DNA from: Macrostomum hystrix
Lineage: Eukaryota > Animalia > Platyhelminthes
Reading direction: 5' to 3'
Assembly: GCA_950097015.1 (NCBI GenBank)
Contig: CATNEN010000002.1
Location: forward strand, 7,254,001-7,318,000
Length of the DNA: 64,000 nt
Shown: positions 1-45,692 of the stretch, piece by piece
How the letters are laid out: every line of letters begins with the position of its first letter
Numbering within the stretch: the first letter of the stretch is position 1
Translations under genes and position numbers: made by a program
Notes under the pieces: generated by a model
Database searches by the model: none
What the model saw: only the letters and a program-made list of their open reading frames with translations
What the model was told of the DNA's origin: nothing

Positions 1-710
1 AGTGTCTGAGGGGTAGAAGTGTCTGGATGGTAGAAGTGTCTGAGGGGTAGAAGTGCCTGAGGGGCAGAAGTGTCTGAGGGGTAGAAGTGTCTGAGGGGTA
101 GAAGTGTCTGAGTGGCAGAAGTGTCTGAGTGGTAGAAGTGTCTGGGGGGGTAGAAGTGTCTGGGGGGTAGAAGTGTCTGGGGGGTAGAAGTGTCTGAGGG
201 TAGAAGTTTCTGAGGGGTAGAAGTGTCTGAGGGGTAGAAGTGTCTGAGGGGCAGAAGTGTCTGAGGGGTAGAAGTGTCTGGGGGGTAGAAGTGTCTGGGG
301 GGTAGAAGTGTCTGGGGGGCAGAAGTGTCTGGGGGGTAGAAGTGTCTGGGGGGTAGAAGTGTCTGGGGGGCAGAAGTGTCTGAGGGGTAGAAGTGTCTGA
401 GGGGTAGAAGTGTCTGAGGGGCAGAAGTGTCTGAGGGGCAGAAGTGTCTGAGGGGTAGAAGTGTCTGGGGGGTAGAAGTGTCTGGGGGGCAGAAGTGTCT
501 GAGGGGCAGAAGTGTCTGAGGGGCAGAAGTGTCTGAGGGGCAGAAGTGTCTGAGGGGTAGAAGTGTCTGAGGGGTAGAAGTGTCTGAGGGGTAGAAGTGT
601 CTGGGGGGCAGAAGTGTCTGAGGGGCAGAAGTGTCTGAGGGGTAGAAGTGTCTGGGGGGCAGAAGTGTCTGAGGGGCAGAAGTGTCTGAGGGGTAGAAGT
701 GTCTGGGGGG
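1..710. repeat. 17-bp minisatellite (AGAAGTGTCTGAGGGGT)n, runs off the window start
   Basis: Direct tandem repeat. A shorter copy of the same array lies at about 10940-11160. Confidence 0.97.
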
Positions 711-949
711 CTGGTGGTCCGATCCGAAGATCGTGGCTCTCCCGCTCTCCTATGCGTACAATTTCACAGTGCGAGAGGCTAAAGTCGCTAATAAGAAAAA
801 GTTTTGATCCAAGGCAAGTTAGTTTATGTCTATGGGTGTACTAGAGTTAGATTTACGCCCATACTTAATTTGATGCGCATTAAAAAATCTTTAATTGCTT
901 GCCACTCTTACTCACTTTTATCACTTTAAAGCTTCGATTCTGAGTTAAA

Positions 950-2059
950 ATGGCAACCTTGCTTACTCTGCTGAGTCTGGGTTTCGTCTGTGCCCTTTTG
1001 GCCTGCATTACGAAACGTTGGAATGGCGGCGGACTGTTTGACTTGCAGGGTACGATATTGCTGAGTTGCTGCGATAACAAATCAACTTTTACACTCAGAA
1101 TATAGTAGCCCGTTAAACTTTTACGTTTCCCTTTGCAGAATACGGCTATTACGTATTTCGTGTCAGAGACATGACCCTCGTCGGCACCGTTGTTTTGGGG
1201 ATTGGCATGCTACTCGAGTTATTCGCGACTATGGTCAAGAAGCTCAAGACGAGCACTGCTCTCAACGTAGTGATCCTGATTTGCTGCATTATCAGCGGTG
1301 AGTACAAATCCTTGTTCCGCTAAATTTGCCCCTGAGTTAAAGCCACAGCGTGAACCTTTCTCTCCCAGATTTTACAGCTCGCTCACACTACCCCAACTCA
1401 ACAGCCCGCACCCACAACCCCAACTCTACGGCCCGCACCCACAACCCCAACTCTACGGCCCGCACCCACTACCCCAACTCTACAGCCCGCACCCACTACC
1501 CCAACTCTACGGCCCGCACCCACTACCCCAACTCTGTGGCCCGCACCCACAACCCCAACTCTACGGCCCGGACCCACTAACCCAACTCTACGGCCCGCAC
1601 CCACAACCCCAACTCTACAGCCCGCACCCACTACCCCAACTCTGTGGCCCGCACCCGCTACCCCAACTCTGTGGCCCGCACCCACTACCCCAACTCTGTG
1701 GCCCGCACCCACTACAACTATACCCCAACTCTACAGCCCGCACCTACCACCCCAATACTACCGCCCGCACCTACCACCCTAACTCTACAGCCCGCACCCA
1801 CCATCTAAATTCTAAGGCCAGTGCCGACGACCCCGAAGTCTATTTGAAAGTGCTCTTTTTATGTCAACAAGCCTCGAATTTTTTGTTTTAAGCGCTCTCC
1901 TTGTATGTGCACCCCGCAGTTCTAGAGCTGTCATCTGGCCTTTTCTTCTACCTCTGGAGGTACTCATATAGCGGCTACAGCCTCTGTCTGCTGACTGCCA
2001 GCGTTGTGTTCGCTATGGAAGCTCTGATTTTGAACATCAGGCAGTGGCGTCGCGGTTAA
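950..2059 (+). CDS. Minimal four-TM claudin/PMP22-superfamily-like protein, paralog 1 (132 aa, 3 exons)
   Basis: Exons 950-1049, 1139-1297 and 1920-2059 have GT-AG introns in matching phase 1. They give MATLLTLLSLGFVCALLACITKRWNGGGLFDLQEYGYYVFRVRDMTLVGTVVLGIGMLLELFATMVKKLKTSTALNVVILICCIISVLELSSGLFFYLWRYSYSGYSLCLLTASVVFAMEALILNIRQWRRG*. Four hydrophobic segments, a W..GLF motif after TM1 and a YSGYS motif before TM4. Structure is conserved in copy 2. Confidence 0.85.
1385..1800. repeat. 27-bp minisatellite (CCACTACCCCAACTCTACAGCCCGCAC)n in intron 2 of paralog 1
   Basis: Direct tandem repeat; counterpart at 11830-12145. Confidence 0.95.
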
Positions 2060-3032
2060 AGATTTATTTTTTTTGAACAGGCTAGCAATATTTGGCATTC
2101 TACTAGTATTAAAAAGACAATTTAATTCGACAGGACAAAGACTGAAAGATATTGACTCATTATGTTTTCAGTTTTAACTTCATGTATCCCCCTTTTGCCC
2201 CGGGCGAGTGTCTATGTGATGCATGTTTTCATTTATTTCCCTAGGTAAATAAATCATTTATTTCCCGCTGCCCCGCGGGAAGCGGGTTCGAAGCGGGCTT
2301 CGTCTCGGTCAATAAACGAGACACCTCTTGCTTTTGCCCGCTAGACAACAAAATAAATGGGGAATATATACCATTTATTTGCATCGGTGCAAATAAACGG
2401 TTCATTTCACTCGCGCGTAGAAAATATTAAAACGCTGCTTCAAACTGCTCAATAGTCTAAATCAATAAACTTCACTTTACTTCACTCAGAGCTCAAATTT
2501 AATTTGACCATAGACATCGAATATTTTTTTTGCTTTTTACCTCATAAAATTTAATAACGGGCTAAACGCCCCCTTGACCCCGCTTACCCTGTTACGCTGC
2601 TTCTAATTTTAAGTGGGGATACATCTCGCATTCCAAATTAATACCACATTAATTCCACAAAAATGCTTTCGTGCCTCGCTTATTGACCTCAAGCAATAAG
2701 TCACTCAAGTCACTCAAGTCACTCAAGCATTTTGTGCCTAAGAACTGGTATAAATATATGAGTTGCATTGTATAACGTTGGATTAGTGCTTTAGAAGGTT
2801 CGTTAGATGCACGCTCGTTTAAAGAGCTAAGGGAGCTAGTTGAGGAGGAGTGCTGAGAAAAAATATTTTCTTAATTCACACTCATGCGAGAATATGGCCC
2901 AGTCACCAGCTAAAGTCAAGCTTTCGAATTTGAGAAAATTTCCAAACGAGATGATATCCGCATTGTCTACCGAGGAGATTGACCCAATTCTGGATGAGCC
3001 TGATGATCTACCGGAGTCGGCGATTGATCGAG

Positions 3033-4234
3033 TAGATGATCGCAGTTTAGCGTGAACTTGGCTCCCAGCAGAAAGTGCCTCGCTCGCTGTGTCGCCCACA
3101 CGATGGCCAGAGCCTCCCTCTCGATGTTGGAATAGTTTTGCTCGGCTGCCGTCAGCCGCCTGGAGAAGTAGAGCACTGGGTGGCCGTCTTGCGTGAGGAT
3201 GGCTGAAACCGCCTTCTCACTAGCGTCCGTAGTCAGAGTCGTGCGCTTCGTCGGGTCGAAGATCCGGATCACCGGATAGGCCGCCAGCGCCCGTTTAAGT
3301 TCGTCGAACTCCTTCTGCTGGTTCGGGCCCCATTTGAACGGTGTCTGGCGGCTCCTTAAGGCAGTCAGCGGCTCGACTCGCTTGGAGTAGGCCTGGATGT
3401 AGCGGGCGTAGTAGTTCGTCAGCCCTAGGAATGACTCCAGTTCCTTCCGACACGTTGGCGCTTTGGTTTGCAGCACTTTCTCCACCAGCTTGGTGTCCGG
3501 CCGGATGCCTTCAGCAGAGATTCGGTATCCCAGAAAGGATATTTCGGTGCTCCTGAAGACGCACTTTTTCTCGTTGATCTCCATCCCTGACTTGCTCAGC
3601 TTGGCTAGCAGTTGTTCGACTTTTGCGTCCAGTTCAGCTGCTGTCCGGGCGCCGATGCAGACATCGTCCTGATAGATCACCAGGTTCGTCACCAGACCGC
3701 CGATCGTGGCTTCCATGGCAGCTTGGAACTGCGCGCTCGCAGTTTTCACGCCGTAAGGCATCCTCGTCCAGCGCAGCAAACCGATCGGGGTGTTGATGGT
3801 GAGGATTTCCCTGGCCGACTCGTCCAGCTCGATCTGGTTGTAGGCGTTCGTCAGGTCAACCGTGGCGAAGTGGGACATCCCTGACAGCTCTGTAAAGGCT
3901 GTCTCGATGTTCGGGAGCGGGTACGAGTCTGCGCAAATTTGCGGGTTCACACTCACTTTGTAGTCGGCGCAGATCCGCATGGCGCCGTCGGTCTATCGCG
4001 GCCAGGCGCATTGATAGCCTGAGCGTGGGCGGGCACGGTGCCGCCAATGTCCTTTAACTCTTCACTGACCTATTAATGTACATGCCTATTGTGTGGCACG
4101 TGGCCACCGCTCAATAATATCGCACGTTGTACTTGTATCTCGCGTTCTATATAAGTGATGTGACTGATGCACAAATTTATTATCGTGTTCGCTCCAAACT
4201 AACAAACATAAGATTCACTCTAAACGACACGACA
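3033..4234 (-). mobile_element. Deleted Ty3/Gypsy LTR retrotransposon: 5' LTR, PBS and RT-RNase H fragment
   Basis: ORF 3980-2967 has RT motifs (MRICADYK, YPLP, FATVDL..AYNQI, YQDD) and RNase H motifs (TDAS, EREALAI, CDH). A 187-bp LTR at 4048-4234 has TGTC...GACA ends, followed on the minus strand by a PBS-like TGGCGGCACCGTG from 4046. gag, protease, integrase and the 3' LTR are missing. The element is absent from duplicate copy 2. Confidence 0.92.
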
Positions 4235-4303
4235 CGAAGATCTACTAGAGTCTCTTTTCCAGAAGATACCCGACGAAGAGGCTGCGCTCGCATTTGCACT
4301 GGA

Positions 4304-5043
4304 CCGACGCTGCGGCGGCGAGCGTCGGTCTGGTGGTCAACACGCAGAAGACCGTCGTGCTCTGCGTGCCGGGCGACATCGAGGCCGCAATTTTCTGCCG
4401 AGGCGCTGACGGGCAGGTGGCGGAACTCCCGCGCTGTCAGCAATTCGTCTACCTTGGCGGTCTGGCGCTTAACGTCCGCGAGGATCTGCGGCGTCGCCGC
4501 GGTCTTGCCTGGGCAGCCTTCCACTCGGTGCGAGCTGTCCTGCATTCCGTGGCCCTGCCTGACCGTCAGAGGGCGGCGCTGTTCCAGGCGGTGGTCGAGA
4601 CCGTCCTGCTTTACAACGCCGAGACATGGACGCTGACGGAGACGCTGGAGCATCTAGTCGATGCAGCGCACGCTGGCCTGCTGCGCGCTGCCTTCAAAGT
4701 CGGCAAGGATGATCGGACCACCAACGCGGCACTCTATCGCCGCGCCGGCCTGACCCGTCCAAGCGAGCTGTTGCGCCGTCGGCGGCTACAGCTGGCAGGC
4801 CACCTAATCCGAGCCGAGGAGTACTGCCCCCAGCCCGTGCAAGAGGTACTTCTGCTGACGACGCAAGCACCCTACCGGCGGGGGCAAGCGCGAACTCGGC
4901 GTTTCGTCGACTGCCTGCTAGCCGACGCCGGCGCCCCGGATACTGCCGGGGGTCCTGCTTTTGTTCGCGCCCAGGCCTTGAAACATGCCTTCTGACGCCA
5001 TGGACCATGGAGAGACCTGGCGTATATTGTTGTTGTTGTTGTG
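4304..5043 (+). mobile_element. 5'-truncated RTE-clade non-LTR retrotransposon
   Basis: C-terminal RT/thumb motifs (GLVVNTQKT, FVYLGG, LLYNAETWTL) ending at 4995, then a (GTT)n tail. 10-bp TSD TTGCACTGGA at 4294-4303 and 5044-5053. The empty site is present in copy 2 near 14277. Confidence 0.92.
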
Positions 5044-5289
5044 TTGCACTGGAACAACTCATTTCTGAAATTGAAGAGACCGCTGCTAGCGAAAGTGTGA
5101 CAAAGGCTACTGAATATTACTTCTGCAAGTTGCCAAGCTTCATGGAGAACCATCCGTCAGTTCAGTGGGATTTGTAGACTGCGACACCGCGAGAGAGATC
5201 TCCTACTTCGGCGACAGAGGTGGCGAGTGGATTCGCTCCCTGAGCAACGAATCCTTTCGTTTGGAGACGGATTCGGATGCGATTGAAGT

Positions 5290-8095
5290 GGTAGCGTATT
5301 TAGTTATTCTGGGTAGCGTACTTAGTTATTCTAGGTTGCGTATTAAGTTATTCTGGGTAGCGTATTTCGTTTTTCTGGGTAGCGTATCTAGTTATTCTGG
5401 GTAGCGTATTTAGTTATTCTGGGTAGCGCATTTAGTTATTTTGGGTAGCGTACTTAGTTATTCTAGGTTGCGTATTCAGTTATTCTGGGTAGCGTATTTA
5501 GTTATTCTGGGTAGCGTATTCAGTTATTCTGGGTAGCGTATTTAGTTATTCTGGGTAGCGTATTTAGTTATTCTGGGTAGCGTATTTAGGTATTCTGGGT
5601 TTGATGTGGAGTGTGCTGCGGGAATCGAGTGGGAATGTGAGCCAGCGGAATTTTTCCAATTTTTAGTAGCCAAATAATCGCGACCCACATAGCAGCTGGC
5701 CGCAGAACACCATCATTAATCTTAGGGCCGGGCTTGGGGCGGAGGTGAATTAAGTAGCCGCCGATTCCCCTTGCCTCGGATCTGTCTAGTCTCCTGTAGA
5801 AGTGACTGATCGCGGCCATAGCAATACTGTATGGACTAGTTTAGGTCATAATTCCCCTCCAAACCGCGATCAGATTGTAGGGATCACTCATGCGTCTAGA
5901 GTGAGCATTAATTCTTCATGTCCCCTTTCTTTACTGTAACCCGAGCCGAAGCTCGATTATGACCTTTTCCCCCTTTAGATACATGTAACGACACTATAGG
6001 CAGGTCGGCGCCTGCGCTTCCCATATCCCGGCGGGATCACAATCATTGGCCGACTGCCGGCAGACGCTCCTAGTGGGGCATCTGGCGATTCTCGCCGCCG
6101 CTTCGGTGGGCAATTGGGGTGGCATAATGCCGACCCGATTCCTCGCTGACAGGCTGGCGAGCATGTGGGTTGCTTTGATGGATGCGGGGTTGACGGAGCT
6201 GCAGGACTATTTAAGAAAGCGCGCTGCGCTGCCCCTTTTACCTGGACCTTCCTTCCACAAGCCTTCCCTCCGAACCTTCCCTGGAGCAAACTTCCCCTTT
6301 GGACCTTCTCCCCCTGTCCGGTCCCGGAACTCGGTCCGTGGACTCTCCCCCTGCTAGCCTAGCACTTAGCCCCTGAGCCTGAGGCTCCAGAGCATAGCTG
6401 CAGGTAAATACCTGTTAGTTCCCGTAAGTATAAGCCACCTCCTTGGGTGAGCTCCAATTGAGCATCGAGCTCCTTGCAGCCTGGCCCCTTGCCAGCTGTG
6501 TTTAGCAACTCCTCGTCTCGTTCCCCTTTTATTTGCCCATCCCTACGAGAGCGACGGCCTGCAGCAAAGTCAGCCAGCATCAGATAAGTAACCCGCGCAG
6601 CGGACACTAATTGTTATCCCTAAGGGATTTATTATTTAGCTAGTGGGGCAAACGGGGCAAGGGCGGTATTTTAGCCTAATAAACCATTTATTAATTGACT
6701 GCCATTTTTAATAATTAGGCCAATTTTATAACAACTAAACCTTTCCTTATCATGCTATTCTCTTCTCTTTATTTTATCGCTAGGCAGCCCTCGATCATGA
6801 GTGGCTAACTTATTAGGGGGATGGGCTCTGGTGATGCCGAGCTGAAAGCTGCGGCAGGAAGACAACTGTGAGCGCGCATGAAAGTAATAAGGAGCTAGGG
6901 ATTTGCGAGTAAAATGCGGAATGTAGCGTGTGCATTGCTGCTTAGGGGCGGGGAATTCCTTGGCCGGCTTTCCTCTCTCACTGGCGGATTCCAGTGTACG
7001 CGTCAAACTCCTTTGTCAATTGAATTCTCCTTCTATTCCCCGCCCTCGCAACTACGGCCATGGGAGCGAGAGGCGTGACCTAATATTTATCGCTTGCATA
7101 ATCACTCAGCCAGTGTTCTGCTTAATCTCTCCTGCCTCTGACTTCCTCATCTCACCCAGATTCGGATTTGCTAGTTATTTAATGTGTAGGCTGCAATCTA
7201 ATGTAAGGAATGTGCCTGATGTTTCATGAGTAGGATTCCGGCTATGGGTTTCTCATTCGAGTTCGGAGTACCACCTTTCTAGACCACTGTAGCGCAGTTT
7301 CAGGAATCCCCTGTTGAGGCGTGTCTCGATTCCTTCTGGGGTCTTCGCCCTAGTCTAAAACGGAGGTTACAGAATGCCCTATTTTTCGGCTTGTCTGAGA
7401 TCTGTGTGACAAACTAGGAGCTGTGAACTCCGGGGACCCAAGTTCCCAAATGTCTGCGGTGGCAACGTAGGCGCATTGGGTGGTGGCGCTACCCTAGATC
7501 ATTTTCCGCTTTGCCAATAGCCTTTCCGCATTTCTAAGACAAGAGCCTGGGCCGAATCGACCACTGCTACCACTGTTAGGAGTCAGTTATGTACATGCTA
7601 CTGATGACAGTAGGCTATCTAGCCCTGTCCTACCTGCTTGCGGGTAGTCCGATATCTCTTTAGACTTTAGCCGGTTTCGAGCACTGCTTGGGGTAGGCAC
7701 GGCAATCATGCCTGTGGCCTATGGGTTGAGTGGGACTGGCCAGCCTGAGGCCGAGAGGACCACTCCCTGCATCCACTGTCTCTCCCTTCATCTCTCCCTT
7801 CATCCCCCTCCCCGCGATAAATCGCGAGGCTTTGCGGTACGACTTCTAACTCTATCGCCATTCCCACACTCCCTTTCTCTCTTGAGGATAGGTCATCGGA
7901 TTGCAAAACCCGCACCCACTTCAGGTTGCGTATTTAGTTATTCTGGGTAGCGTATTTAGTTATTCTAGGTTGCGTATTTAGTTATTCTGGGTAGCGTATT
8001 TAGTTATTCTGGGTAGCGTATTTAGTTATTCTGGGTAGCGTATTTAGTTATTCTGGGTAGCGTATTTAGTTATTCTGGGTAGCGTATTGTCTGGG
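5290..8095. repeat. 22-bp minisatellite (GGTAGCGTATTTAGTTATTCTG)n, split into about 5290-5601 and 7924-8095 by an insertion
   Basis: Direct repeats on both sides of the 5602-7923 insertion; related array at 14865-15255. Confidence 0.93.
5602..7923. mobile_element. 2.3-kb solo-LTR-like insertion inside the 22-bp satellite
   Basis: TG...CA ends with an imperfect 8-bp inverted repeat (TGATGTGG / CCACTTCA). 4-bp TSD GGTT at 5598-5601 and 7924-7927. Internal TATA-like GGACTATTTAAG near 6206 and AATAAA near 6678. No recognisable coding capacity; absent from copy 2. Confidence 0.65.
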
Positions 8096-9814
8096 TAACG
8101 TAAAAATGACCCCCTATCCAATGCAATCTAAAATTAATATATAATATTTTCTGATGAGCAGCAGTCATGGACTTTGATTGTCAGACTGATTGGCTATTGA
8201 AGCGAAGCTGAAATCGAGCAAAATGTAGTCGCATTGCTTTAGCAGCAGAACTACAAATAGAAGAATTCCCCCACACAATTTTCGTGCTGCACCCGAACGG
8301 AGCAACGCAAGCACACAAAACTCAAGCCAACTTTTTTTGCGCATCTTCTGAAACAATAATCAAGTCGCCAGCTCCTCAGACCTTCGAGATATTCAATGTT
8401 TCTGGCTGGAGTTCAGATTTTTCCTATAAGAGCTAATGTATTTCATACCCCCTTTACACTAATTAGCACTGCCTTGCCAGGCCTTCGAAATTTGCCGTCA
8501 TTTTCTTGCCAGTCAACGAATGTGCCTGCATCTTCTCCGTTTTCTGTGGTCATCGATCTTTATCTAGACGGACTGCTGGACCTTCAAGGGCTACAATGGA
8601 CACCCTGACGCGAATTACTCCAGTTTCACTGATCAAGCATAAAACATTAGGCGCAGCTCAACCACAGTACACCATCGCCTAGTCTGTCAACCAATCAGTC
8701 ACCACCCACCGCTGTTAGCATTCAAGCGCTGCCAAAAATATTTCAGCGCCCCCTTTGTAATCAGGTGGCAAAATGGCTTTGGTAGTCCTACTGTTAATGT
8801 CTTAAGTCCTCTCCTCTCTACTCTCAGTAGTGCGAAACAAAATAAAATGTCGAAGAAATACGAGTAAGACCTCAAGATTTAGTTTCTCAGTCCTCAGAAG
8901 CGCAATGTGAAGGGACATAGATTTTTATCTTGGCTTTTGATTGCTTTAAAAGCGGCTTCGCTTAAGACGTCACCGTGAAGACACTGAGGTCCACCTGATG
9001 TCTGGCGATCAAAAGCAGAATTGTTCGGGCACGCGTTTCTTTTAACTTGGAACAAGAGACAGAGAGATCAGCTTTCTTTACTCTGCCTTGAAATAGGAAA
9101 TACACGGAAGGGCTTGAGTACTTCAGTTCAGAAAATCTTAGAATTTTTTTATTTTTAAACACTTAATGCCTCTTTGAGCAGAAAGCAAAGCTGGTTCACT
9201 TGAGTAAGTTCGGCAGTTTTCCATCTTTTCTTCTTGCCATGCCAACTATCTCTTAATTTTCGGCTGTTTCGGTTGAATCTGCAGCCCCAACAGGTATCTA
9301 TATACAGAAACAGAACAGTATTGTATCTGCCCTGCCACTAAACCTTGGCCTCCGCTACTCCTCATCAGATCCACATCTACCTGGGAAAAAACAAAATGCA
9401 AAATTCCCAAAGAAGGAAGGGGAGAAAGCAAGGCGATATGAAGCCCGAGGGAGGTCCGGAGATAAGAGAAGATTAATTCTTGTCTCCTCCATCATTTTCT
9501 TCCGTTGCTACCTGTGGCGAGTAGCTGGGGGGGATGGCAGGAGACTCGAAGGAGTTGAAAATCCTGCCGAGGGAGCGGACTGCACATCGGGGCGAAGTCC
9601 TTTTGCTTCATTCTTACCCGAATCTTTGGGGTGGCGGCAATGGCGTGTCGGCGGGGCGAGAGCGACAGTCAGCTGACTGATTGACTGCCTGGCTGACGGT
9701 TGGTGTCAGCTTAGTTTTGCAATTTTGCTCAATTTAACAATTTCCATCAAGGTTTGCGCAGTTTTCACTGTCTAAGAGTGCACGGATAAAAGTGCAGGAC
9801 TCGGAGCTATTGAA

Positions 9815-10150
9815 AGACTCCTGCTTCGATTCTTGTTGTCTCTCCTGCTTCGATACTTAGCGTGTCTCTCCTGCTTCGATTCTTGTTGTCTCTCCTGCTT
9901 CGATACTTAGCGTGTCTCTCCTGCTTCGATTCTTGTTGTCTCTCCTGCTTCGATTCTTGGTGTCTCTCCTGCTTCGATACTTAGTGTGTCTCTCCTGCTT
10001 CGATTCTTGTTGTCTCTCCTGCTTCGATACTTAGCGTGTCTCTCCTGCTTCGATTCTTGTTGTCTCTCCTGCTTCGATACTTAGCGTGTCTCTCCTGCTT
10101 CGATTCTTGGTGTCTCTTCTGCTTCGATACTTGGTGTGTCTTCTCAGCGT
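9815..10150. repeat. 24/26-bp minisatellite (TCTCCTGCTTCGATTCTTGTTGTC / TCTCCTGCTTCGATACTTAGCGTGTC)
   Basis: Direct repeats; longer counterpart at 16385-16890. Confidence 0.95.
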
Positions 10151-10304
10151 TAAAAAATTAATGTGACCTTTTTCGCATCGACCCAGCTTTGATCTGAGTG
10201 ACTTACAGCTGTCAACAGGTATTTATGATAGTTTTTATTATACAGATGGTGTAGCTTAAAACTTTTCGTTTGTTCCTTTTTTAAGCAAATGACACATTCA
10301 TGGC

Positions 10305-10655
10305 AGGGGGTGAGTACTGCAGCGAAACGCGTCTGCCTCCCGCGCTAAGGTCCCTGAGCTCGATTCTGCGGCGAAGCCACTTTCATTTGGGTCCATCCGC
10401 GGAGAGAAGGCTTGGGGTTTGTTGTGCAATTTAAGCCCTCAAGGGCGACCACCCAATGCTCAGTAAGAGGGTACACTGCCTGACGATAAGAAAGTCATGC
10501 CAGATTTACACACCTGTGTGAGCGTTTGCCTGAGTAAAGCTTCTGTGTGCGAGTGTGCTCAGGAGTCAGCGAAACAGGCAAAATTGCCCCCTCGCTGGCT
10601 GCGGGTCTAGTGAGTCACCAAATGATGCGCCATTGCCCACAGCCCTCCTGCAAAT
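10305..10655 (+). mobile_element. tRNA-derived SINE, decayed copy
   Basis: Colinear with the reverse complement of the full-length copy at 62414-62750. Confidence 0.85.
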
Positions 10656-10939
10656 AAAATTAATTCCTACTTCACTACGGTACTATCCATTCAATGCAGC
10701 GCCAAGTGGGTGAGGAATCTGTATTACGAGCCGCTGTTTTATTCTAAATGCTTTGACATTGCAGTGAAAACATTTACGGGGGGAATGTTGACATTAGGGC
10801 TGCGATATTCTGATGTCATGTACAAGTGCTCACGAAAGCAGAACTACCAGAAACTCGATGGCTGAAGGCATGAAGACATTGTGAGTGACGATATCCGGGG
10901 CGGGGGGTATTGGCAGTTAAAAGTGGACGTTGGGATCGT

Positions 10940-11160
10940 CACAAGTGTCTGGGGCGTAGAAGTGTCTGAGGGGTAGAAGTGTCTGAGGGGTAGAAGTGTC
11001 TGAGGGGTATAAGTGTCTGAGGGGTAGAAGTGTCTGAGGGGTATAAGTGTTTGAGGGGTAGAAGTGTCTGAGGGGTAGAAGTGTCTGAGGGGTAGAAGTG
11101 TCTGAGGGGTAGAAGTGTCTGAGGGGTAGAAAGTCTGAGGGGTAGAAGTGTCTGAGGGGC
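10940..11160. repeat. 17-bp minisatellite, copy 2
   Basis: Same unit as 1-710. Confidence 0.95.
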
Positions 11161-11409
11161 TGGTGGTCCGATTCAAAGATATATTTCGTGCATGGCTCAT
11201 ACGCTCTCCTATGCGCACAACTTCACCAGTGCAAGAGAGGCTAAAGTCAATATAAAGTAAAAGTTTTGATCCAAGGCAAGTTAATTTACGTCTATGGGTG
11301 TACTAGATTTAGATTTACCCCGTACTTAATTTGATGCGTATTTAAAAATCTTTTTTGCTTGCCACTCTTGCTCACTCTTATCACTCTTAAGGTTCGATTC
11401 TGAGTTAAA

Positions 11410-12401
11410 ATGGCAACCGTCTTTACTCTGCTGAGTCTGGGTTTCGTCTGTGCCCTTTTGGCCTGCATTACGAATCGTTGGAATGGCGGCGGACTGTTTG
11501 ACTTGCAGGGTACGATATTGCTGAGTTGCTGAGATAACAAATGAACTTTTACACTCAGAATATAGTAGCCCGTTTAACTTTTACGTTTCCATTTGCAGAA
11601 TACGGCCATCATGTTTTTCATGTCAGAGTCATAACCATCATCGGCACCGTTTTTTTGGGTATTGGCGTGCTACTCGAGTTATTCATGAGAATGTTCAAGA
11701 AGTTGAAGCAGAAAACTTCTATCAACGTAATGATCCTGATTTGCTGCATTATCAGCGGTGAGTACAAATCCTTGTTCCGCTAAATTTGCCCGTGTTTAAG
11801 CCACAGCGTGAACCTTTCTCTCCCAGATTTTACAGCCCGCACCCACTACCCCAACTCTACAGCCCGCACCCACTACCCCAACTCTACAGCCCGCACCCAC
11901 TACCCCAACTCTACAGCCCGCACCCACTACCCCAACTCTACAGCCCGCACCCACAACCCCAACTCTACAGCCCGCACCCACTACCCCAACTCTGTGGCCC
12001 ACACCCACAACCCCAACTCTACGGCCCGCACCTGCTACCCCAACTCTACAGCCCGCACCTACCACCCCAATTCTACACCCCGCACCTACCACCTCAAATC
12101 TACAGCATGCACCCACCACCCCAACCCTACGGCCCGCACGCACCATCTAAATTCTAACGCCAGAGCCGACGACCCCGAAGTCTATTTGAAAGTGCTCTTT
12201 TTATGTCAACAAGCCTCGAAGCATTTCTTTTAAGCGCTCTCCTTGTATGTGCACCCCGCAGTTGTAGGGCTGTTATCTGGCCTTTTATTGTACCTCAGGA
12301 GGTACTCAGAAAGCGGCTACAGCCTCTGGCTGCTGACTGCCAGCGTTGTGTTCGCTATGGAAGCTATGATTTTGAACATCAGGCAGTGGCATCGCGGTTA
12401 G
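11410..12401 (+). CDS. Minimal four-TM claudin/PMP22-superfamily-like protein, paralog 2 (132 aa, 3 exons)
   Basis: Exons 11410-11509, 11599-11757 and 12262-12401 have the same lengths and phases as paralog 1. They give MATVFTLLSLGFVCALLACITNRWNGGGLFDLQEYGHHVFHVRVITIIGTVFLGIGVLLELFMRMFKKLKQKTSINVMILICCIISVVGLLSGLLLYLRRYSESGYSLWLLTASVVFAMEAMILNIRQWHRG*. Confidence 0.85.
11830..12145. repeat. 27-bp minisatellite in intron 2 of paralog 2
   Basis: Direct repeat of the same unit as 1385-1800. Confidence 0.95.
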
Positions 12402-13009
12402 TATTTATTTTGTTTGAACAGGCTAGCAATATTTGGCATTCTACTAGTATTAGAAAGACAATTTAAATCGAATGGACAAAGACTGAAAGACACTGAATCA
12501 TTATATTTTTATATTGTTCTTATTTACCCTTGATGGCAAACGCTTCTTCGTCCTTCTAAAAAATATTCAACGATATTTTTTTATTTTTATAATTTCTACA
12601 ATGAAGGTGTTAGAATTTATTTTTGCATGACAACTCTATCTGCAGTTGGTCTGAGTGCACTTTTAGCTGCTGCATGCCTTAGACCTGATTCTGATGATTC
12701 CCCCACTTGCCCCGGGCGAACATCTCTGTTTTCAGTTGAAACTTCATTTATTTGCATCGGTGCAAATACACAGTTCATTTCACTCGCGCGTAGAAAATAT
12801 TAAAACGCTGCTTCTAACTGCTCAATAGTCTAAATCAATAAACTTCACTTTACTTCACTCAGCTATAGCTCAAATTTAATTTGACCATAGACATTGAATA
12901 ATTTTTGTTTTTCGCTCATAAAATTTAATAACGGGCTAAACGCCCCTTGACCCCGCTTACCCCGTTACGCTGCTTCTAATTTTAAGTGGGGAGATATCAC
13001 GCATTCGAC

Positions 13010-13790
13010 ATTAATACCACATTAATTCCACATTAATTCCACATTAATTCCACATTAATTCCACATTAATACCACATTAATTCCACATTAATTCCACATT
13101 AATTCCACATTAATACCACATTAATTCCACATTAATTCCACATTAATTCCACATTATTACCACATTAATTCCACATTAATTCCACATTAATTCCACATTA
13201 ATTCCACATTAATTCCACATTAATTCCACATTAATTCCACATTAATTCCACATTAATTCCACAATAATACCACATAAATTCCACATTAATTCCACATTAA
13301 TTCCACATTAATTCCACATTAATTCCACATTAATTCCACATTAATTCCACAATAATACCACATTAATACCACATTAATTCCACATTAATACCACATTAAT
13401 TCCACATTAATTCTACATTAATACCACATTAATTCCACATTAATTCCACATTAATACCACATTAATTCCACATTAATTCCACATTAATTACACATAAATA
13501 CCACATTAATTCCACATTAATTCCACATTAATTCCACATTAATACCACATTAATTCCACATTAATTCCACATTAATTCCACATTAATACCACATTAATTC
13601 CACATTAATTCCACATTTATACCACATTAATACCACATTAATTCCACATTAATACCACATTAATTACACATTAATACCACATTAATTCCACATTAATTCC
13701 ACATTAATTCCACATTAATACCACATTAATTCCACATTAATTCCACAATAATACCACATTAATTACACATTAATACCACATTAATTCCAC
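13010..13790. repeat. 11-bp minisatellite (TTCCACATTAA)n
   Basis: About 70 units. The matching site in copy 1 (about 2630-2662) has only 2-3 units. Confidence 0.97.
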
Positions 13791-14010
13791 AAAAATGCTT
13801 TCGTGCCTCGCTTATTGCCCAAGAACTGGTATAAATGTATGAGTTGCATTGTATAGCGTTGGATTAGTGCTTTAGATGGTGCATTAGATGCACGCTCATT
13901 TAAAGAGTTCGCTTTCAACTTAGACTAAGGGAGTTAACTAAGGGAACGTTGGATTAGTGCTTTAGAAGGTCCGTTAAATGCACGCTCGTTTAAAGAGCTA
14001 AGGGAGCTAG

Positions 14011-14862
14011 TTGAGGAGGAGTGCTGAGAAAAAATACTTTCTTAATTCACACTCATGCGAGAATATGGCCCAGTCACCAGCTAAAGTCAGGCTTTCGAAT
14101 TTGAGAAAATTTCCAAACGAGATGATATCCGCATTGTCTACCGAGGAGATTGACCCCATTCTTGATGAGCCTGATGATCTACCGAAGTCGGCGATTGATC
14201 GAGAAGACGAAGATCTACTAGAGTCTCTTTTCCAGAAGACACCCGACGAAGAGGCTGAGCTCGTATTTGCACTGGAACAACTCGTTTCTGAAATTGAAGA
14301 GACCGCTGCTAGCGAAAGTGTGACAAAGGCTACTGAATATTACGTCTGCAAGTTGCCAAGCTTCATGGAAAACCATCCGTCAGTTCAGTGGGATTTGTAG
14401 ACTGCGACACCGCGAGAGATTGACTGTCTTTTGAGTCACTTCTACGGTCCACTTCGCAAGAAGGATGGCGAACACTTTGCTCCAGCCACGTTGATTTGCA
14501 TCCGAGCGGCCCTCTTCCGGCATTTTATGTCGACAGGGCCAATCAATATTCTGACCGACAGTGCATTCTACGCATTCAACAAGACGCTGAAGTCAATGGG
14601 TAGAGTGGGCAAAGAAGTATCCAGGGATTCATGTGACGATATCAAGGAAGCTGTTTTGAGTGCGTTGCCAGACAAAAGCCGCTACCCCGTGGCAGCTATA
14701 TGAAGCTCTATTTAGCTAAGCGTCAGCAATCCATCCCATCAAGCAGTGCTGATACGGTGAAAAGACATTTCTTCCTGCAGCCGAAGAAAACTGGCTGGCC
14801 GAATGGAGCATGGTACTGCCTGCACAAGCCATTGGTGTTAATCCGTTGGGTCAGCTGATGAG
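14011..14862 (+). pseudogene. Degenerate Crypton-like (DUF3504 tyrosine recombinase) DNA transposon gene
   Basis: Reading across a stop and frameshifts gives TKATEYYV, LLSHFYGPLRKKDGEHFAPATLICIRAALFRHF, YPV...KLYLAKR...FFLQPK, and WYC...IGVNPLGQLM. These motifs are typical of Crypton/KCTD1/ZMYM/QRICH1 DUF3504 regions. The interior is heavily deleted. Confidence 0.78.
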
Positions 14863-14864
14863 TA

Positions 14865-15255
14865 CTTAGTATTCAGTTAGTCTAGGTAGCGTATCTAGTT
14901 ATTCTGGGTAGCGTATCTAGTTATTCTGGGTAGCGTATCTAGTTATTCTGGGTAGCGTATCTAGTTAGTCTAGGTAGCGTATTTAGTTAGTGTAGGTAGC
15001 GTATTCAGTTAGTGTAGGTAGCGTATTCAATTAGTCTAGGTAGCGTATTCAGTTAGTCTAGGTAGCGTATCTAGTTATTCTGGGTAGCGTATCTAGTTAT
15101 TCTACTAGGTAGCGTATTCAGTTAGTCTGGGTAGCGTATTCAGTTAGTCTAGGTAGCGTATTCAGTTGGTCTAGGTAGCGTATTCAGTTTGTCTAGGTAG
15201 CGTATTCAGTTAGTCTAGGTAGCGTATTCAGTTAGTCTAGGTAGCGTATTCAGTT
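14865..15255. repeat. 22-bp minisatellite variant (GGTAGCGTATTCAGTTAGTCTA)n
   Basis: Direct repeat, homologous to 5290-8095. Confidence 0.95.
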
Positions 15256-16384
15256 ACCACAGTACACCATCGCCTAGTCTGTCAACCAATGAGTCACCGC
15301 CCGAAATCTGTCAACTAATTCAAGCGCTGCCAAAAAAATTTCAGCGCCCCCTTGGTGATCGGGTGGCAAAATGGCTTTGGTAGTCCTACTGTTAATGTCT
15401 TAAGTCCTCTCCTCTCTACTCTCAGTAGTGCGAAACAATTTAAAATGTTGTAGAAATACGAGTAAGACCTCTAGATTTAGTTTCTCAGTCCTTAGTAGCG
15501 CATTGTGAAGGGACATAGATTTTTATCTTGGCTTTTGATTGCTTTGAAAGCGGCTTCGCTTAAGACATCACCGTGAAGACACTGAGGTCCACCTGATGTC
15601 TGGAGATCAAAAGCAGAATTGTTCGGGCATGCGTTTCCTTTAACTTGGAATAAGAGACAGAGAGATCAGCTTTCTTTACACTGCCTTGAATTAGGGAATG
15701 CACGGAAGGGCTTGAGTACTTCAGTTCAGAAAATCTTTGAATTTTTTTTAAACACTCAATCCCTCTTTGAGCAGAAAGCAAAGCTGGTTCACTTGAGTAA
15801 GTTCGGCAGTTGCCATAGCAACTATCTCTTAATTTTCGGCTGTTTCGGTTGAATCTGCAGCCCCTACAGGTATCTATATACAGATACAGAATTGTATCTG
15901 CTCTGCCACTACACCTTGGCCTCCGCTACACCTCAGATCCACATCAGCCGGGCAAAAAAATAAAATGCAAAATTCCCAAAGAAGGAAGGGGAGAAAGCAA
16001 GGCGATATGAAGCCCGAGGGAGGTCCGGAGATAAGAGAAGATTAATTCTTGTCTCCTCCATCATTTTCTTCCGTTGCTACCTGTGGCGAGTAGCTGGGGG
16101 ATGGCAGGAGACTCGGAGGAGTTGAAAATCCTGCCGAGGGAGCGGACTGCACATCGGGGCGAAGTCCTTTTGCTTCATTCTTACCCGAATCTTTGGGGTG
16201 GCGGCAATGGCGTGTCGGCGGGGCGAGAGCGACAGTCAGCTGACTGATTGACTGCCTGGCTGACGGTTGGTGTCAGCTCAGTTTTGCAATTTTGCTCAAT
16301 TTAACAATTTCCATCTAGGTTTGCGCAGTTTTCACTGTCTAAGAGTGTACGGATAAAAGTGCAGGACTCGGAGCTATTGAAAGA

Positions 16385-16890
16385 CTCCTGCTTCGATTCT
16401 TGTTGTCTCTCCTGCTTCGATACTTAGCGTGTCTCTCCTGCTTCGATACTTAGCGTGTCTCTCCTGTTTCGATACTTAGCGTATCTCTCCTGCTACAATA
16501 CTTAGTGTGTCTCTCCTGCTTCGATTCTTGTTGTCTCTCCTGCTTCGATTCTTGTTGTCTCTCCTGCTTCGATACTTGGTGTGTCTCTCCTGCTTCGATT
16601 CTTGGTGTCTCTCCTGCTTCGATACTTGGTGTCTCTCCTGCTTCGATACTTAGCGTGTCTCTCCTGCTTCGATACTTACTGTGTCTCTGTTGCTTTGATA
16701 CTTAGTATGTCTCTCCTGCTTCGATTCTTGGTGTCTCTCCTGATTCGATTCTTGGTGTCTCTTCTGCTTCGATTCTTGGTGTCTCTCCTGCTTCGATTCT
16801 TGTTGTCTCTCCTGCTTCGATACTTAGCGTGTCTCTCCTGCTTCGATTCTTGGTGTCTCTTCTGCTTCGATACTTGGTGTGTCTTCTCAG
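16385..16890. repeat. 24/26-bp minisatellite, copy 2
   Basis: Same units as 9815-10150. Confidence 0.95.
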
Positions 16891-17044
16891 CGTTAAAAAA
16901 TTAATGTGACCTTTTTCGCATCGACCCAGCTTTGATCTGAGTGACTTACAGCTGTCAACAGGTATTTATGATAGTTTTTATTATACAGATGGTGTAGCTT
17001 AAAACTTTTCGTTTGTTCCGTTTTTTAAGCAAATGACACATTCA

Positions 17045-17400
17045 TGGCAGGGGGTGAGTACTGCAGCGAAACGCGTCTGCCTCCCGCGCCAAGGTCCCTG
17101 AGCTCGATTCCGCAAAGCGACTTTCATTTGGGTCCCATCCGCGGAGAGAAGGCTTGGGGTTTGTTGTGCAATTTTAGCCCTCAAGGGCGACCACCCAATG
17201 CTCAGTAAGAGGGTACACTGCCTGACGATAAGAAAGTCATGTCAGATTTAAACACCTGTGTGAGCGTTTGCCTGAGTAAAGCTTCTGTGTGCGAGTGTGC
17301 TCAGGAGTCAGCGAAACAGGCAAAATTGCCCCCTCGCTGGCTGCGGGTCTAGTGAGTCACCAAATGATGCGCCATTGCCCACAGCCCTCCTGCAAGTAAA
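17045..17400 (+). mobile_element. tRNA-derived SINE, decayed copy (duplicate of 10305-10655)
   Basis: Near-identical to 10305-10655. Confidence 0.85.
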
Positions 17401-17691
17401 ATTAATTCCTACTTCACTACGGTACTATCCATTCAATGCAGCGCCAAGTGGGTGAGGAATCTGTATTACGAGCCGTTGTTTTATTCTAAATGCTTTGACA
17501 TTGCAGTGAAAACATTTACGGGGGGAATGTTGACATTAGGGCTGCGATATTCTGATGTCATGTACAAGTGCTCACGAAAGCAGAACTACCAGAAACTCGA
17601 TGGCTGAAGGCATGAAGACATTGTGAGTGACGATATCCGGGGCGGGGGGTATTGGCAGTTAAAAGTGCATCGAATTGGTGCGGAACGCGGC

Positions 17692-45000: not shown

Positions 45001-45692
45001 ATGTGTATCGGATGTACATGGCACTGAAGTACCCTAATTATGTGTATCGGATGCACATGGGACTGAAGTAACCTAATTATGTGTATCGGATGTACATGGC
45101 TCTGAAGTACCCTAGTTATGTGTATCGGATGTACATGGCTCTGAAGTACCCTAGTTATGTGTATCGGATGTACATGGCTCTGAAGTACCCTAGTTATGTG
45201 TATCGGATGTACATGGCTCTGAAGTACCCTAATTATGTGTATCGGATGTACATGGCTCTGAAGTACCCTAGTTATGTGTATCGGATGTACATGGCTCTGA
45301 AGTTCCCTAATTATGTGTATCGGATGTACATGGCTCTGAAGTACCCTAATTATGTGTATCGGTTGTACATGGCTCTGAAGTTCCCTAATTATGTGTATCG
45401 GATGTACATGGCTCTGAAGTACCCTAATTATGTGTATCGGATGTACATGTCTCTGAAGTTCCCTAATTATGTGTATCGGATGTACATGGCACTGAAGTAC
45501 CCTAATTATGTGTATCGGATGCACATGGGACTGAAGTAACCTAATTATGTGTATCGGATGTACATGGCTCTGAAGTACCCTAGTTATGTGTATCGGATGT
45601 ACATGGCTCTGAAGTACCCTAGTTATGTGTATCGGATGTACATGGCTCTGAAGTACCCTAGTTATGTGTATCGGTTGTACATGGCTCTGAAC
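42080..45692. repeat. 39-bp satellite (GATGTACATGGCTCTGAAGTACCCTAGTTATGTGTATCG)n, 3.6 kb, with 30-bp variants and higher-order blocks
   Basis: Direct; source of the 1224-aa minus-strand ORF. Confidence 0.98.

What the first reader, a model, noticed from the sequence alone, without database searches (positions are those of the whole stretch)
950..12401. Tandem pair of hidden 132-aa four-TM genes diverging almost only by amino-acid changes
Seen: two intact 3-exon paralogs (950-2059 and 11410-12401) that the ORF track does not reconstruct. Hand comparison gives 30/132 aa differences and about 41 coding substitutions, only about 6 of them synonymous. Exon 3 has 11 non-synonymous and 0 synonymous changes. 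Exon 2 differs at 26/159 nt, while adjacent intron 1 differs at only 4/89. A rough pN/pS is about 2. Inference: positive selection or neofunctionalisation of a small membrane protein, as expected for recognition, reproductive or host-pathogen surface molecules. Gene conversion homogenising exon 1 and intron 1 is an alternative for part of the pattern.
Basis: partly seen in the sequence, partly recalled or inferred. Interest (0 to 1): 0.82.

Follow-up and report, generated by a model that had tools for sequence, protein, structure and literature searches.

The report
Fast-evolving claudin-like flatworm gene copies
Two neighbouring copies of a small four-helix membrane-protein gene in a flatworm genome (probably Macrostomum hystrix) are real, intact genes from a young three-copy cluster whose proteins change about three times faster than neutral DNA, a textbook-style case of adaptive divergence after duplication in a protein of unknown function.

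Summary
Both 3-exon, 132-aa models are intact, with GT-AG introns. They differ at 30/132 residues through 36 non-synonymous and 5 synonymous changes (omega 2.3), which is not significant for this pair alone (p=0.08).

The pair lies in a tandem segmental duplication. It belongs to a seven-gene family in a 220-Mb, 42-contig genome that matches the Macrostomum hystrix assembly. A third close copy, C, lies 83 kb upstream. The parental type is D/E on another contig.

- **Age of the copies:** D/E are 77-82% identical to a M. lignano orthologue and evolve at omega about 0.1. A/B/C split from D/E recently (dS 0.12-0.22, against about 1.1 to M. lignano).
- **Speed of change:** A/B/C are only 46-52% identical to D/E and the orthologue. 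A has 49 lineage-specific residue changes against 3 in D.
- **Selection tests:** Maximum-likelihood omega is about 3 on the A/B/C stem (p=0.015) and crown (p about 5e-4). A conservative single-hit count gives p=0.02-0.07.
- **Gene conversion:** It is also real. B and C are virtually identical through the 5' flank, intron 1 and the start of intron 2. This, not selection, explains the exon-2 versus intron-1 contrast.

The fold is a weak match to PMP22/EMP/claudin. Function and expression are untested.

The parts
950..1049 (+). Gene A exon 1 (ATG; N-terminus, TM1, start of the first outer loop with the W..GGLFDL motif)
   Evidence: ATG at 950 and a GT donor at 1050. The same exon occurs in B, C, D, E, F and G.
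1050..1138 (+). Gene A intron 1 (89 nt, phase 1)
   Evidence: GT...AG boundaries. It differs at 4/89 from B and 4/89 from C. B and C are identical here.
1139..1297 (+). Gene A exon 2 (distal outer loop 1, TM2, inner loop, most of TM3). It contains the hyper-divergent island, codons 34-70.
   Evidence: It differs at 26/159 from B. In the island dS is 0.21 and dN 0.19.
1298..1919 (+). Gene A intron 2 (phase 1), with a 27-bp minisatellite at 1386-1801
   Evidence: GT at 1298 and AG at 1918-1919. TRF finds 15 copies of period 27. Reading through from exon 2 meets a TAA after 9 codons. The same minisatellite sits in intron 2 of B and D.
1920..2059 (+). Gene A exon 3 (end of TM3, outer loop 2, TM4, C-terminal QWRRG, TAA stop)
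   Evidence: 11 non-synonymous and 0 synonymous differences from B. Exon-3 omega among A/B/C is 9.8, p = 0.002.
11410..11509 (+). Gene B exon 1
   Evidence: It differs at 2/100 from C.
11599..11757 (+). Gene B exon 2
   Evidence: It differs at 30/159 from C although both flanking intron stretches are identical to C.
11758..12261 (+). Gene B intron 2, with a 27-bp minisatellite at 11831-12143
12262..12401 (+). Gene B exon 3 (TAG stop)
1..10925 (.). Segmental-duplication unit carrying gene A. It is larger than unit B because of extra sequence, including a retroelement fragment.
   Evidence: Self-BLAST blocks match 490-2168, 2372-3036, 5044-5196 and 8661-10925 to 10940-17667 at 89-98% identity.
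10940..17667 (.). Segmental-duplication unit carrying gene B
   Evidence: A third unit with gene C lies at G000:C2:7170577-7174112 and has the same 17-bp satellite upstream.
1..710 (.). 17-bp minisatellite directly upstream of gene A. The same array lies at 10943-11159 upstream of B and also upstream of C.
   Evidence: TRF; BLAST against the C region.

Best explanation
A and B are functional genes for 132-aa four-helix membrane proteins. They belong to a flatworm family that most resembles the PMP22/EMP/MP20/claudin tetraspan fold.

**History.**
- A conserved parental gene (type D/E, the orthologue of M. lignano Mlig011666) was copied to a new locus within the lineage of this species, most likely Macrostomum hystrix.
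- The new copy lost 8 N-terminal codons and gained 3 codons in the first outer loop.
- It replaced about half of its residues while synonymous and intron sites changed by only about 10-20%.
- It was then amplified to three copies (C, then the tandem pair A and B) by duplication of a 7-11 kb segment.
- The three copies keep diverging by amino-acid replacements. These are densest in TM2, the short outer loop 2, the inner loop and the distal part of outer loop 1.
- Gene conversion keeps the 5' flank, exon 1, intron 1, the 3' end of exon 2 and the start of intron 2 nearly identical.

**What is shown:** the gene structure, the family, the timing, the rate asymmetry, omega above 1 under codon models, and the conversion tracts.

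**What is inferred:**
- The excess replacements were driven by positive selection for new or changing interaction surfaces, partly inside the membrane.
- The proteins act, like other tetraspans of this fold, as small scaffolding, adhesion or auxiliary subunits.
For: **Real genes.**
- Seven intact paralogues share both phase-1 intron positions.
- The M. lignano orthologue has exons of 142/150/140 nt with the same phases.
- Among A/B/C there are no indels in 396 coding columns against about 8 indel events in 664 non-coding columns.
- The indels on the stem are in frame.

**Timing.**
- dS from each of A-E to M. lignano is 1.10-1.17. dS between A/B/C and D/E is 0.12-0.22, and intron divergence is 0.09-0.28.
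- The topology (ABC,DE) beats (DE,Mlig) by 17.9 lnL.

**Asymmetry.**
- D/E are 77-82% identical to P0001. A/B/C are 46-49% identical.
- Tajima-type counts are 44-49 against 3-8, p 1e-7 to 1e-11.

**Omega.**
- NG86 gives 2.0-2.65 within A/B/C and 1.6-2.8 against D/E.
- GY94 ML on A/B/C gives 3.4-3.8, p 1e-4 to 4e-4, under four codon-frequency models.
- Without the exon-2 island omega is 11.6, p 2.5e-4.
- In a parametric bootstrap under omega = 1, none of 150 replicates reached the observed value.
- Branch models give background 0.11-0.15, stem 2.5-3.1 (p 0.015) and crown 3.3-3.9 (p 1.4e-4 to 5.6e-4).
- Single-hit codon columns are 37 non-synonymous to 6 synonymous in A-E, against 12 to 43 for D versus M. 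lignano (Fisher p 2e-10).

**Conversion.** B equals C over a run of 23 consecutive variable sites (p 5e-5).

**Fold (three weak leads that agree).**
- AF2 model of orthologue P0001: four helices, pTM 0.70.
- Foldseek and VIA-align top matches are TARP-gamma, Cav-gamma1, claudin-3/-15 and MP20 (TM 0.6-0.75; Z 14.7-15.2).
- A profile search against PDB sequences puts claudin-4 and claudin-18 in five of the six matches, at E 1.4-2.9; the single best row (E 1.1) is an unrelated phage protein.
- Language-model neighbours with a Pfam family are all PMP22_Claudin-type.
Against: - The gene is short, and all sequences come from one genome, so fixed differences and polymorphism cannot be separated.
- With multi-hit codons removed the non-synonymous excess over neutrality is only marginal (p 0.02-0.07). 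23 of 55 variable codons in A/B/C are multi-hit. Seven of these are consecutive (codons 35-41 in C) and look like one complex event.
- Gene conversion is active here, which violates the single-tree assumption. The M1a/M2a site tests are therefore not trustworthy.
- Replacements in A/B/C hit positions invariant in D/E/F/M. lignano as often as variable positions (39/70 vs 40/61, p 0.29). The ancestral constraint pattern is gone, which fits loss of function as well as change of function.
- No transcript evidence was available for A, B or C.
- The fold assignment rests on an orthologue of the parental type. It is not significant by sequence, and generic four-helix bundles score almost as high (Z 14.4).
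Confidence: 0.65

Rival explanations
1. Relaxed constraint only. After duplication the C2 copies lost their function or most of it and drift neutrally (true omega about 1). The open frames survive by chance or because the loss is recent.
For: - Replacements fall on family-invariant positions as often as on variable ones.
- The A-B pair alone is not significantly above 1 (p 0.08).
- Single-hit counts are only marginally above neutral.
- A-B coding and non-coding divergence are alike (10.4% vs 8.7%).
- There is no expression evidence.
Against: - ML omega is 3.3-3.9 with p below 1e-3, and none of 150 neutral simulations reached it.
- The chance of no stop codon in about 83 crown substitutions is 0.058, and lower still with the stem included.
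- There are 0 indels in coding sequence against about 8 in flanking non-coding DNA (p about 0.02).
- All 12 splice dinucleotides are kept in three genes.
- The indels on the stem are multiples of three.
- The non-synonymous rate in exon 3 (about 0.27 per site on the A/B/C tree) exceeds that of the adjacent intron (about 0.12).
Confidence: 0.15
2. A conversion mosaic without adaptive evolution. The copies are older than they look. Gene conversion has homogenised introns, flanks and many synonymous sites. The divergent coding patches are simply old sequence that escaped conversion.
For: - There is clear conversion between B and C.
- The four segments support conflicting relationships: (B,C), (A,B), (B,C), (A,B).
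- The exon-2 island has high dS as well as high dN.
Against: - Conversion copies synonymous and non-synonymous sites alike, so it cannot raise their ratio. Outside the island omega is higher, not lower (11.6).
- dS from all five genes A-E to M. lignano is the same (about 1.1), and no A/B/C-type protein was found among 1.84 billion representatives.
- A/B/C and D/E lie on different contigs.
Confidence: 0.1
3. A mutational artefact. Clustered multi-nucleotide or templated mutations (micro-conversions from unknown donors, slippage near the minisatellites) create many adjacent changes. Single-step codon models misread these as positive selection.
For: - Seven consecutive codons (35-41) are almost completely rewritten in C, starting two bases into exon 2.
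- 23 multi-hit codons occur among A/B/C.
- The locus is full of minisatellites.
Against: - Removing codons 34-41 or 34-70 strengthens the signal.
- Single-hit codons alone still give 28:4 and 37:6 against an expected ratio of about 2.7:1.
- Such events would also produce frameshifts, and none are seen.
Confidence: 0.1

Closest known systems
PMP22 / EMP / MP20 / claudin / TARP-gamma tetraspan superfamily (Pfam PF00822, PF13903 and relatives)
   Same: - Small size, four TM helices, short cytosolic ends.
- A conserved W and a G-L-aromatic motif just after TM1.
- Best structural matches are Cav-gamma1, TARP-gamma, claudin-15 and MP20 (Z 14.7-15.2, 129-141 residues aligned).
- Claudins make up five of the six weak profile-vs-PDB matches, just below an unrelated phage protein.
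- UniRef names one M. lignano member 'Epithelial membrane protein 2'.
   Different: - No Pfam model is matched (best is Claudin_2 at E 5.7, on a distant relative).
- The first outer loop is only about 22 residues long, has no cysteine pair in A-F, and is not predicted as a beta-sheet.
- W and GLF are 3-4 residues apart instead of about 18 (the claudin spacing is from my own knowledge).
- Generic helical bundles score nearly as well.
M. lignano hypothetical proteins Mlig011666 (P0001), Mlig029609 (P0004) and A0A1I8FTX5 (P0002)
   Same: Same family and same three-exon structure. P0001 is the orthologue of D/E (77-82% identity), P0004 of G (54% identity), and P0002 of F.
   Different: No M. lignano counterpart of the A/B/C type was found. 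A/B/C are only 46-49% identical to P0001, although they are as close to D/E at silent sites as dS 0.12-0.22.
Homogenised introns beside divergent exons in multigene families (for example HLA class I/II introns versus peptide-binding exons; from my own knowledge)
   Same: Non-coding parts are kept nearly identical by recombination or conversion, while particular coding stretches stay or become very different.
   Different: Here the pattern is between paralogues in one genome, not between alleles. Balancing selection has not been tested.
Rapidly evolving, lineage-restricted genes of Macrostomum (reproduction-related genes discussed by Wiberg et al. 2023, PMC10468722)
   Same: Same genus. Fast sequence evolution and gene turnover make homologues hard to detect.
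   Different: Nothing here links A/B/C to testis, ovary or tail expression. The link is only a hypothesis.

Membership tests
PMP22/EMP/MP20/claudin superfamily | Four transmembrane helices in a left-handed bundle, about 130-220 aa, both ends on the same (cytosolic) side | tested here: met
   Four hydrophobic segments are present in A, B and C. The AF2 model of orthologue P0001 has helices 2-26, 48-77, 81-111 and 117-142. The orientation is inferred from the basic inner loop (KKLK) and tail (RQWRRG).
PMP22/EMP/MP20/claudin superfamily | Match to a Pfam model of the clan (PF00822, PF13903, PF10242) above the gathering score | tested here: not met
Single exons of A and B gave no hit. For full-length homologues P0001, P0002, P0004 and P0006 the only hit was Claudin_2 at E 5.7 (7.1 bits, cut-off 29.1) on P0006.
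PMP22/EMP/MP20/claudin superfamily | Outer loop 1 signature W-(x)n-GLW-C-(x)n-C and a beta-sheet formed by the outer loops | tested here: not met
   W24 and G28-L29-F30 are invariant in A-F and P0001. But there is no cysteine pair, the loop is about 22 aa, and the model shows a short helix plus a low-confidence coil with no strands.
PMP22/EMP/MP20/claudin superfamily | Closest solved structures are family members, clearly above unrelated folds | tested here: inconclusive
   The top six VIA-align rows are Cav-gamma1, TARP-gamma8/3, a designed claudin fold, claudin-15 and MP20 (Z 14.7-15.2). An unrelated ROP-type bundle follows at Z 14.4. Foldseek E-values are 0.02-0.3. hmmsearch against PDB gives claudin-4 and claudin-18 at E 1.4-2.9.
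MARVEL domain proteins (PF01284) | Match to the MARVEL model, or closest structures being synaptophysin, synaptogyrin or occludin-type | tested here: not met
   There was no MARVEL hit at E <= 10. Synaptophysin scores Z 12.9 and synaptogyrin Z 11.8, both below the claudin-type matches. The only support is an automatic UniRef name on the G-type M. lignano proteins.
Genes under positive selection after duplication | dN/dS significantly above 1 on the derived lineage, with a constrained parental lineage | tested here: met
   Background omega is 0.11-0.15, stem 2.5-3.1 (p 0.015) and crown 3.3-3.9 (p <= 6e-4). Caveat: the single-hit-only counts give p 0.02-0.07.
Paralogues undergoing gene conversion | Significantly long identical tracts and conflicting relationships along the gene | tested here: met
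   B equals C over a run of 23 variable sites, permutation p 5e-5. The segments alternate between (B,C) and (A,B).

The most novel reading that the evidence does not exclude
A/B/C form a newly born recognition module. On this reading a tetraspan of the claudin/EMP fold was recruited, within the M. hystrix lineage, into an arms race. Candidates are sexual conflict around hypodermic insemination and selfing, or a pathogen or toxin that docks on the protein. Adaptive change would be centred unusually on a transmembrane helix (TM2) and the tiny outer loop 2. Conversion of regulatory and 5' parts would keep the three copies co-expressed.
Probability: 0.12. Interest if true: 0.7.

Novelty: new member of a known kind. 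Interest (0 to 1): 0.45.

Why it matters
Whole-gene dN/dS well above 1 is rare. It usually marks proteins involved in reproduction, immunity or conflict.

This case has a clean natural comparison:
- a conserved parental pair (omega about 0.1);
- three young daughters (omega about 3);
- an outgroup orthologue;
- all in a model genus that has positional RNA-seq, in situ hybridisation and RNAi.

The protein belongs to an unannotated flatworm family with a claudin/EMP-like fold. The case could show what such minimal tetraspans do and how change inside a membrane helix can be adaptive.

The locus is also a compact example of gene conversion and divergence acting side by side. It shows why a contrast between exon and intron divergence is not by itself evidence of selection.

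Tried and rejected
- **Pfam on each exon of A and B:** nothing, the pieces are too short.
- **Pfam on full-length database homologues:** nothing significant.
- **Word-based protein search with P0001:** only M. lignano itself.
- **Literature search for the M. lignano gene ids, and their look-up in the supplements of Wiberg et al. 2023:** no occurrences. Expression could therefore not be read off.
- **Literature search for Macrostomum plus claudin, PMP22 or EMP:** nothing relevant.
- **Earlier notes of this scan:** none on this locus or family (one search was a malformed query).
- **Fold search library 'atlas':** not available.
- **Is the 27-bp intron-2 minisatellite a hidden Pro/Thr-rich coding exon?** Rejected. 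All three frames of the unit are open by composition. Read-through from exon 2 stops after 9 codons. The array is present in D, whose M. lignano orthologue protein has no such insert.
- **Site models M1a/M2a:** significant, but I give them no weight because divergence and conversion differ along the gene.
- **Do A/B/C still avoid changing family-invariant positions?** They do not, so I dropped the argument for retained ancestral constraint.
- **C7:1653580-1653699(-) (E 0.001) and C1:9973350 (E 0.19):** weak exon-like hits, not examined further.
- Searches used single exons by reference and database homologues as proxies. Joined coding sequences were built only inside local scripts from the session's files. 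They were used for codon counting and likelihood, and once for a local tblastn against three fetched M. lignano loci.

Full report
**Organism and setting**

The window is G000:C2:7254001-7318000 of a 220,453,370-base, 42-contig eukaryotic assembly. The only published assembly I found with these figures is Macrostomum hystrix, at about 220 Mb and 42 contigs (Wiberg et al. 2023, PMC10468722). The nearest database proteins all come from Macrostomum lignano. I therefore take the genome to be M. hystrix, a free-living flatworm. This is an inference. It is not human. The window is extremely rich in minisatellites (56 TRF rows).

**The observation**

Reading the sequence and translating the models confirms two intact three-exon genes.
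- Gene A is 950-1049 / 1139-1297 / 1920-2059.
- Gene B is 11410-11509 / 11599-11757 / 12262-12401.
- All introns are GT-AG and phase 1. Each gene encodes 132 aa with four hydrophobic segments.
- They differ at 30/132 residues. There are 41 sense-codon substitutions, of which 5.0 are synonymous and 36.0 non-synonymous by Nei-Gojobori. dS is 0.056, dN 0.129 and omega 2.31.
- By segment the differences are 4/100 in exon 1, 26/159 in exon 2, 12/140 in exon 3 (11 non-synonymous, 0 synonymous, plus TAA/TAG) and 4/89 in intron 1.

For this pair alone, however, omega > 1 is not significant (Fisher p 0.08). Overall coding divergence (10.4%) does not exceed aligned non-coding divergence (8.7%, p 0.38).

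**Context in the genome**

A and B sit in two copies of a tandem segmental duplication, 1-10925 and 10940-17667, which match at 89-98% identity in blocks. Each gene is preceded by the same 17-bp minisatellite and carries a 27-bp minisatellite in intron 2.

Whole-genome searches used DNA and exon-by-exon protein profiles. They find seven loci in all.
- A and B, in the window.
- C, 83 kb upstream on the same contig. It lies in a third copy of the unit.
- D and E, a tandem pair 3 kb apart on contig 39.
- F, on contig 9.
- G, on contig 1.

All seven give intact ORFs with both introns at the same positions and phase. Protein identities to A are: B 77%, C 65%, D/E 48-50%, F 35%, G 24%.

**What the protein is**

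Single exons hit no Pfam family. A profile of the seven exon-3 peptides was searched against 1.84 billion representative proteins. It found only five real relatives.
- P0001 (143 aa), P0002 and P0003 are M. lignano proteins of the D/E and F types.
- P0004 (159 aa) is a M. lignano protein of the G type.
- P0006 (161 aa) comes from a metagenome contig.

The sources call these proteins 'hypothetical'. Automatic UniRef names include 'Epithelial membrane protein 2' and 'MARVEL domain-containing'. No A/B/C-type protein from another species appeared.

Full-length homologues match no Pfam model. Three weak lines of evidence agree with each other.
- A family profile searched against PDB sequences gives claudin-4 and claudin-18 in five of its six matches, at E 1.4-2.9. 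The single best row, at E 1.1, is an unrelated phage protein.
- An AF2 model of P0001 (pLDDT 75, pTM 0.70, four helices) is closest to TARP-gamma, Cav-gamma1, claudin-3/-15 and MP20. Foldseek gives TM 0.6-0.75 at E 0.02-0.3. VIA-align gives Z 14.7-15.2.
- The language-model neighbours that carry a Pfam family are all of PMP22_Claudin type. The three nearest clusters are unannotated platyhelminth clusters.

Generic four-helix bundles score almost as high (Z 14.4). The claudin loop signature is only half present: W and GLF are there, but there is no Cys pair and no predicted sheet.

I therefore call it a divergent flatworm tetraspan that works like, and is probably remotely related to, the PMP22/EMP/claudin group. 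It is not a demonstrated member. MARVEL is a poorer fit (no Pfam hit; Z 11.8-12.9).

**Gene conversion**

I aligned A, B and C from -240 to +110, leaving out the minisatellite.

| Segment | B vs C differences |
|---|---|
| 5' flank | 1/240 |
| Exon 1 | 2/100 |
| Intron 1 | 0/89 |
| Exon 2 | 30/159 |
| First 74 nt of intron 2 | 0/74 |
| Exon 3 | 23/137 |

- The variable sites fall into four blocks. These support in turn (B,C), (A,B), (B,C) and (A,B).
- The run of 23 consecutive sites with B = C has permutation p 5e-5.
- The divergent patch in exon 2 (codons 34-70) begins two bases after the acceptor site.
- That patch is as diverged at synonymous sites (dS 0.21-0.28) as at non-synonymous sites, with omega 0.9-1.6.
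- In C, seven consecutive codons (35-41) are almost wholly rewritten.

It does not reflect replacement-only evolution.

**Selection**

The signal of omega > 1 lies mostly outside that island.
- On the three-taxon A/B/C tree, my GY94 implementation gives omega 3.4-3.8. The LRT against 1 has p 1e-4 to 4e-4 under F3x4, F1x4, equal and F61 codon frequencies.
- Dropping codons 34-41 gives omega 5.5. Dropping codons 34-70 gives 11.6 (p 2.5e-4). Exon 3 alone gives 9.8 (p 0.002).
- In 150 data sets simulated under omega = 1, the 95% point of the LRT was 3.99 and the largest omega was 2.36.

The wider comparison is more telling.
- dS between A/B/C and D/E is only 0.12-0.22, and intron and UTR divergence is 0.09-0.28. 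dN is 0.33-0.38, giving omega 1.6-2.8.
- Against F and G, silent sites are saturated and omega is 0.25-0.6.
- I recovered the M. lignano coding sequence from its locus. It has exons of 142/150/140 nt with the same phases.
- dS from each of A, B, C, D and E to it is 1.10-1.17. dN is 0.14-0.16 for D/E but 0.41-0.45 for A/B/C.
- The tree with A/B/C sister to D/E beats the alternative by 17.9 lnL.
- With the M. lignano protein as outgroup, A has 49 private residue changes against 3 in D. All six pairings give p 1e-7 to 1e-11.
- Branch models give background omega 0.11-0.15, A/B/C stem 2.5-3.1 (p 0.015 against 1) and crown 3.3-3.9 (p 1.4e-4 to 5.6e-4). The three-ratio model beats one ratio by LRT 66-90.

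**Caveats I could quantify**

- Using only codon columns with a single changed base, the counts are 28 non-synonymous to 4 synonymous among A/B/C (p 0.04). Among A-E they are 37 to 6 (p 0.02-0.07, depending on kappa). The expected ratio is about 2.7:1. The change of regime is beyond doubt: the same count for D against M. lignano is 12 to 43, Fisher p 2e-10. The step from 'no constraint' to 'positive selection' leans partly on multi-hit codons.
- Replacements in A/B/C strike family-invariant positions as often as variable ones. The old constraint pattern has gone.

**Arguments against plain decay**

- There are no frameshifts in three genes, against about eight indels in the flanking non-coding alignment.
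- The stem indels are in frame.
- All splice sites are kept.
- There is about a 6% chance of escaping stop codons in the crown alone.
- The non-synonymous rate in exon 3 is about twice that of the adjacent intron.

**Where the changes fall**

Among A/B/C, the share of variable positions by region is as follows.

| Region | Variable positions |
|---|---|
| TM2 | 65% |
| Outer loop 2 | 67% |
| Inner loop | 44% |
| Outer loop 1 (mostly its distal half) | 41% |
| TM1 | 10% |
| TM3 and TM4 | 25-27% |

Kept in all members are W24, GLFDL (28-32), the CC of TM3 and the GYS..LLTA..VFA.EA block of TM4.

**Verdict**

- The unit of interest is a three-gene daughter clade (A, B, C) of a conserved parental gene, not just the tandem pair.
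- Gene conversion is demonstrably at work and explains the exon/intron contrast.
- The case for positive selection is good (about 0.65) but not closed.
- Function and expression are unknown.

It is a new, well-framed example of a known phenomenon, in an unannotated flatworm tetraspan family. It is not a new kind of system.

Exon-wise references and database homologues were used instead. Joined coding sequences existed only inside local scripts.

Noticed in passing
window 2967-3980 (-): A 337-aa ORF carries reverse-transcriptase and RNase H domains (RVT_1, RT_RNaseH, RT_RNaseH_2; E down to 6.5e-31). It is a retroelement fragment inside duplication unit A, within the stretch about 3037-5043 that unit B lacks. 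The insertion therefore came after the duplication, or was deleted from B.
   Followed up: partly
window 1386-1801 and 11831-12143; L004:1898-2145: A 27-bp minisatellite (a multiple of three, with all frames open, one reading TTPTLRPAP) sits in intron 2 of A, B, C and D. It produces false ORFs of 123-197 aa in the ORF list. It is judged non-coding because the M. lignano orthologue protein has no such insert and read-through from exon 2 stops at once.
   Followed up: yes
window 1-710 and 10943-11159; G000:C2 about 7170577-7170872: The same 17-bp minisatellite (AGTGTCTGAGGGGTAGA) lies about 240 bp upstream of the start codon of each of A, B and C. It marks the edge of the duplicated unit and may have mediated the duplications.
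   Followed up: partly
window 940-949 and 11400-11409; L004/L005 about 1458-1467: The last bases before the ATG (..gAGttaaaATGGCAAC) are conserved between A/B/C and D/E, although the sequence further upstream is unalignable. Since Macrostomum trans-splices many mRNAs, the AG could be a spliced-leader acceptor. This is speculation and was not tested.
   Followed up: no
L039 (G000:C1:6822500-6826500, minus strand): Paralogue G (162 aa) has a long outer loop 1 with a cysteine. Its intron 1 is filled by another minisatellite. Its M. lignano orthologue P0004 is only 54% identical, so this branch of the family also evolves fast.
   Followed up: partly
G000:C7:1653580-1653699 (-) (L018/L040) and G000:C1:9973350-9973517 (-): These are weak exon-3-like (E 0.001) and exon-2-like (E 0.19) matches to the family profiles. 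They may be further very distant members or chance hits.
   Followed up: no
window 5290-5600, 7924-8088, 14869-15256; 9818-10141, 16385-16884: Further minisatellites (22-bp and 24/50-bp units) are shared between the two duplication units, with different copy numbers. Overall the window holds 56 tandem-repeat rows, including kilobase arrays at 22344-24003, 35792-37712 and 42089-45691.
   Followed up: no
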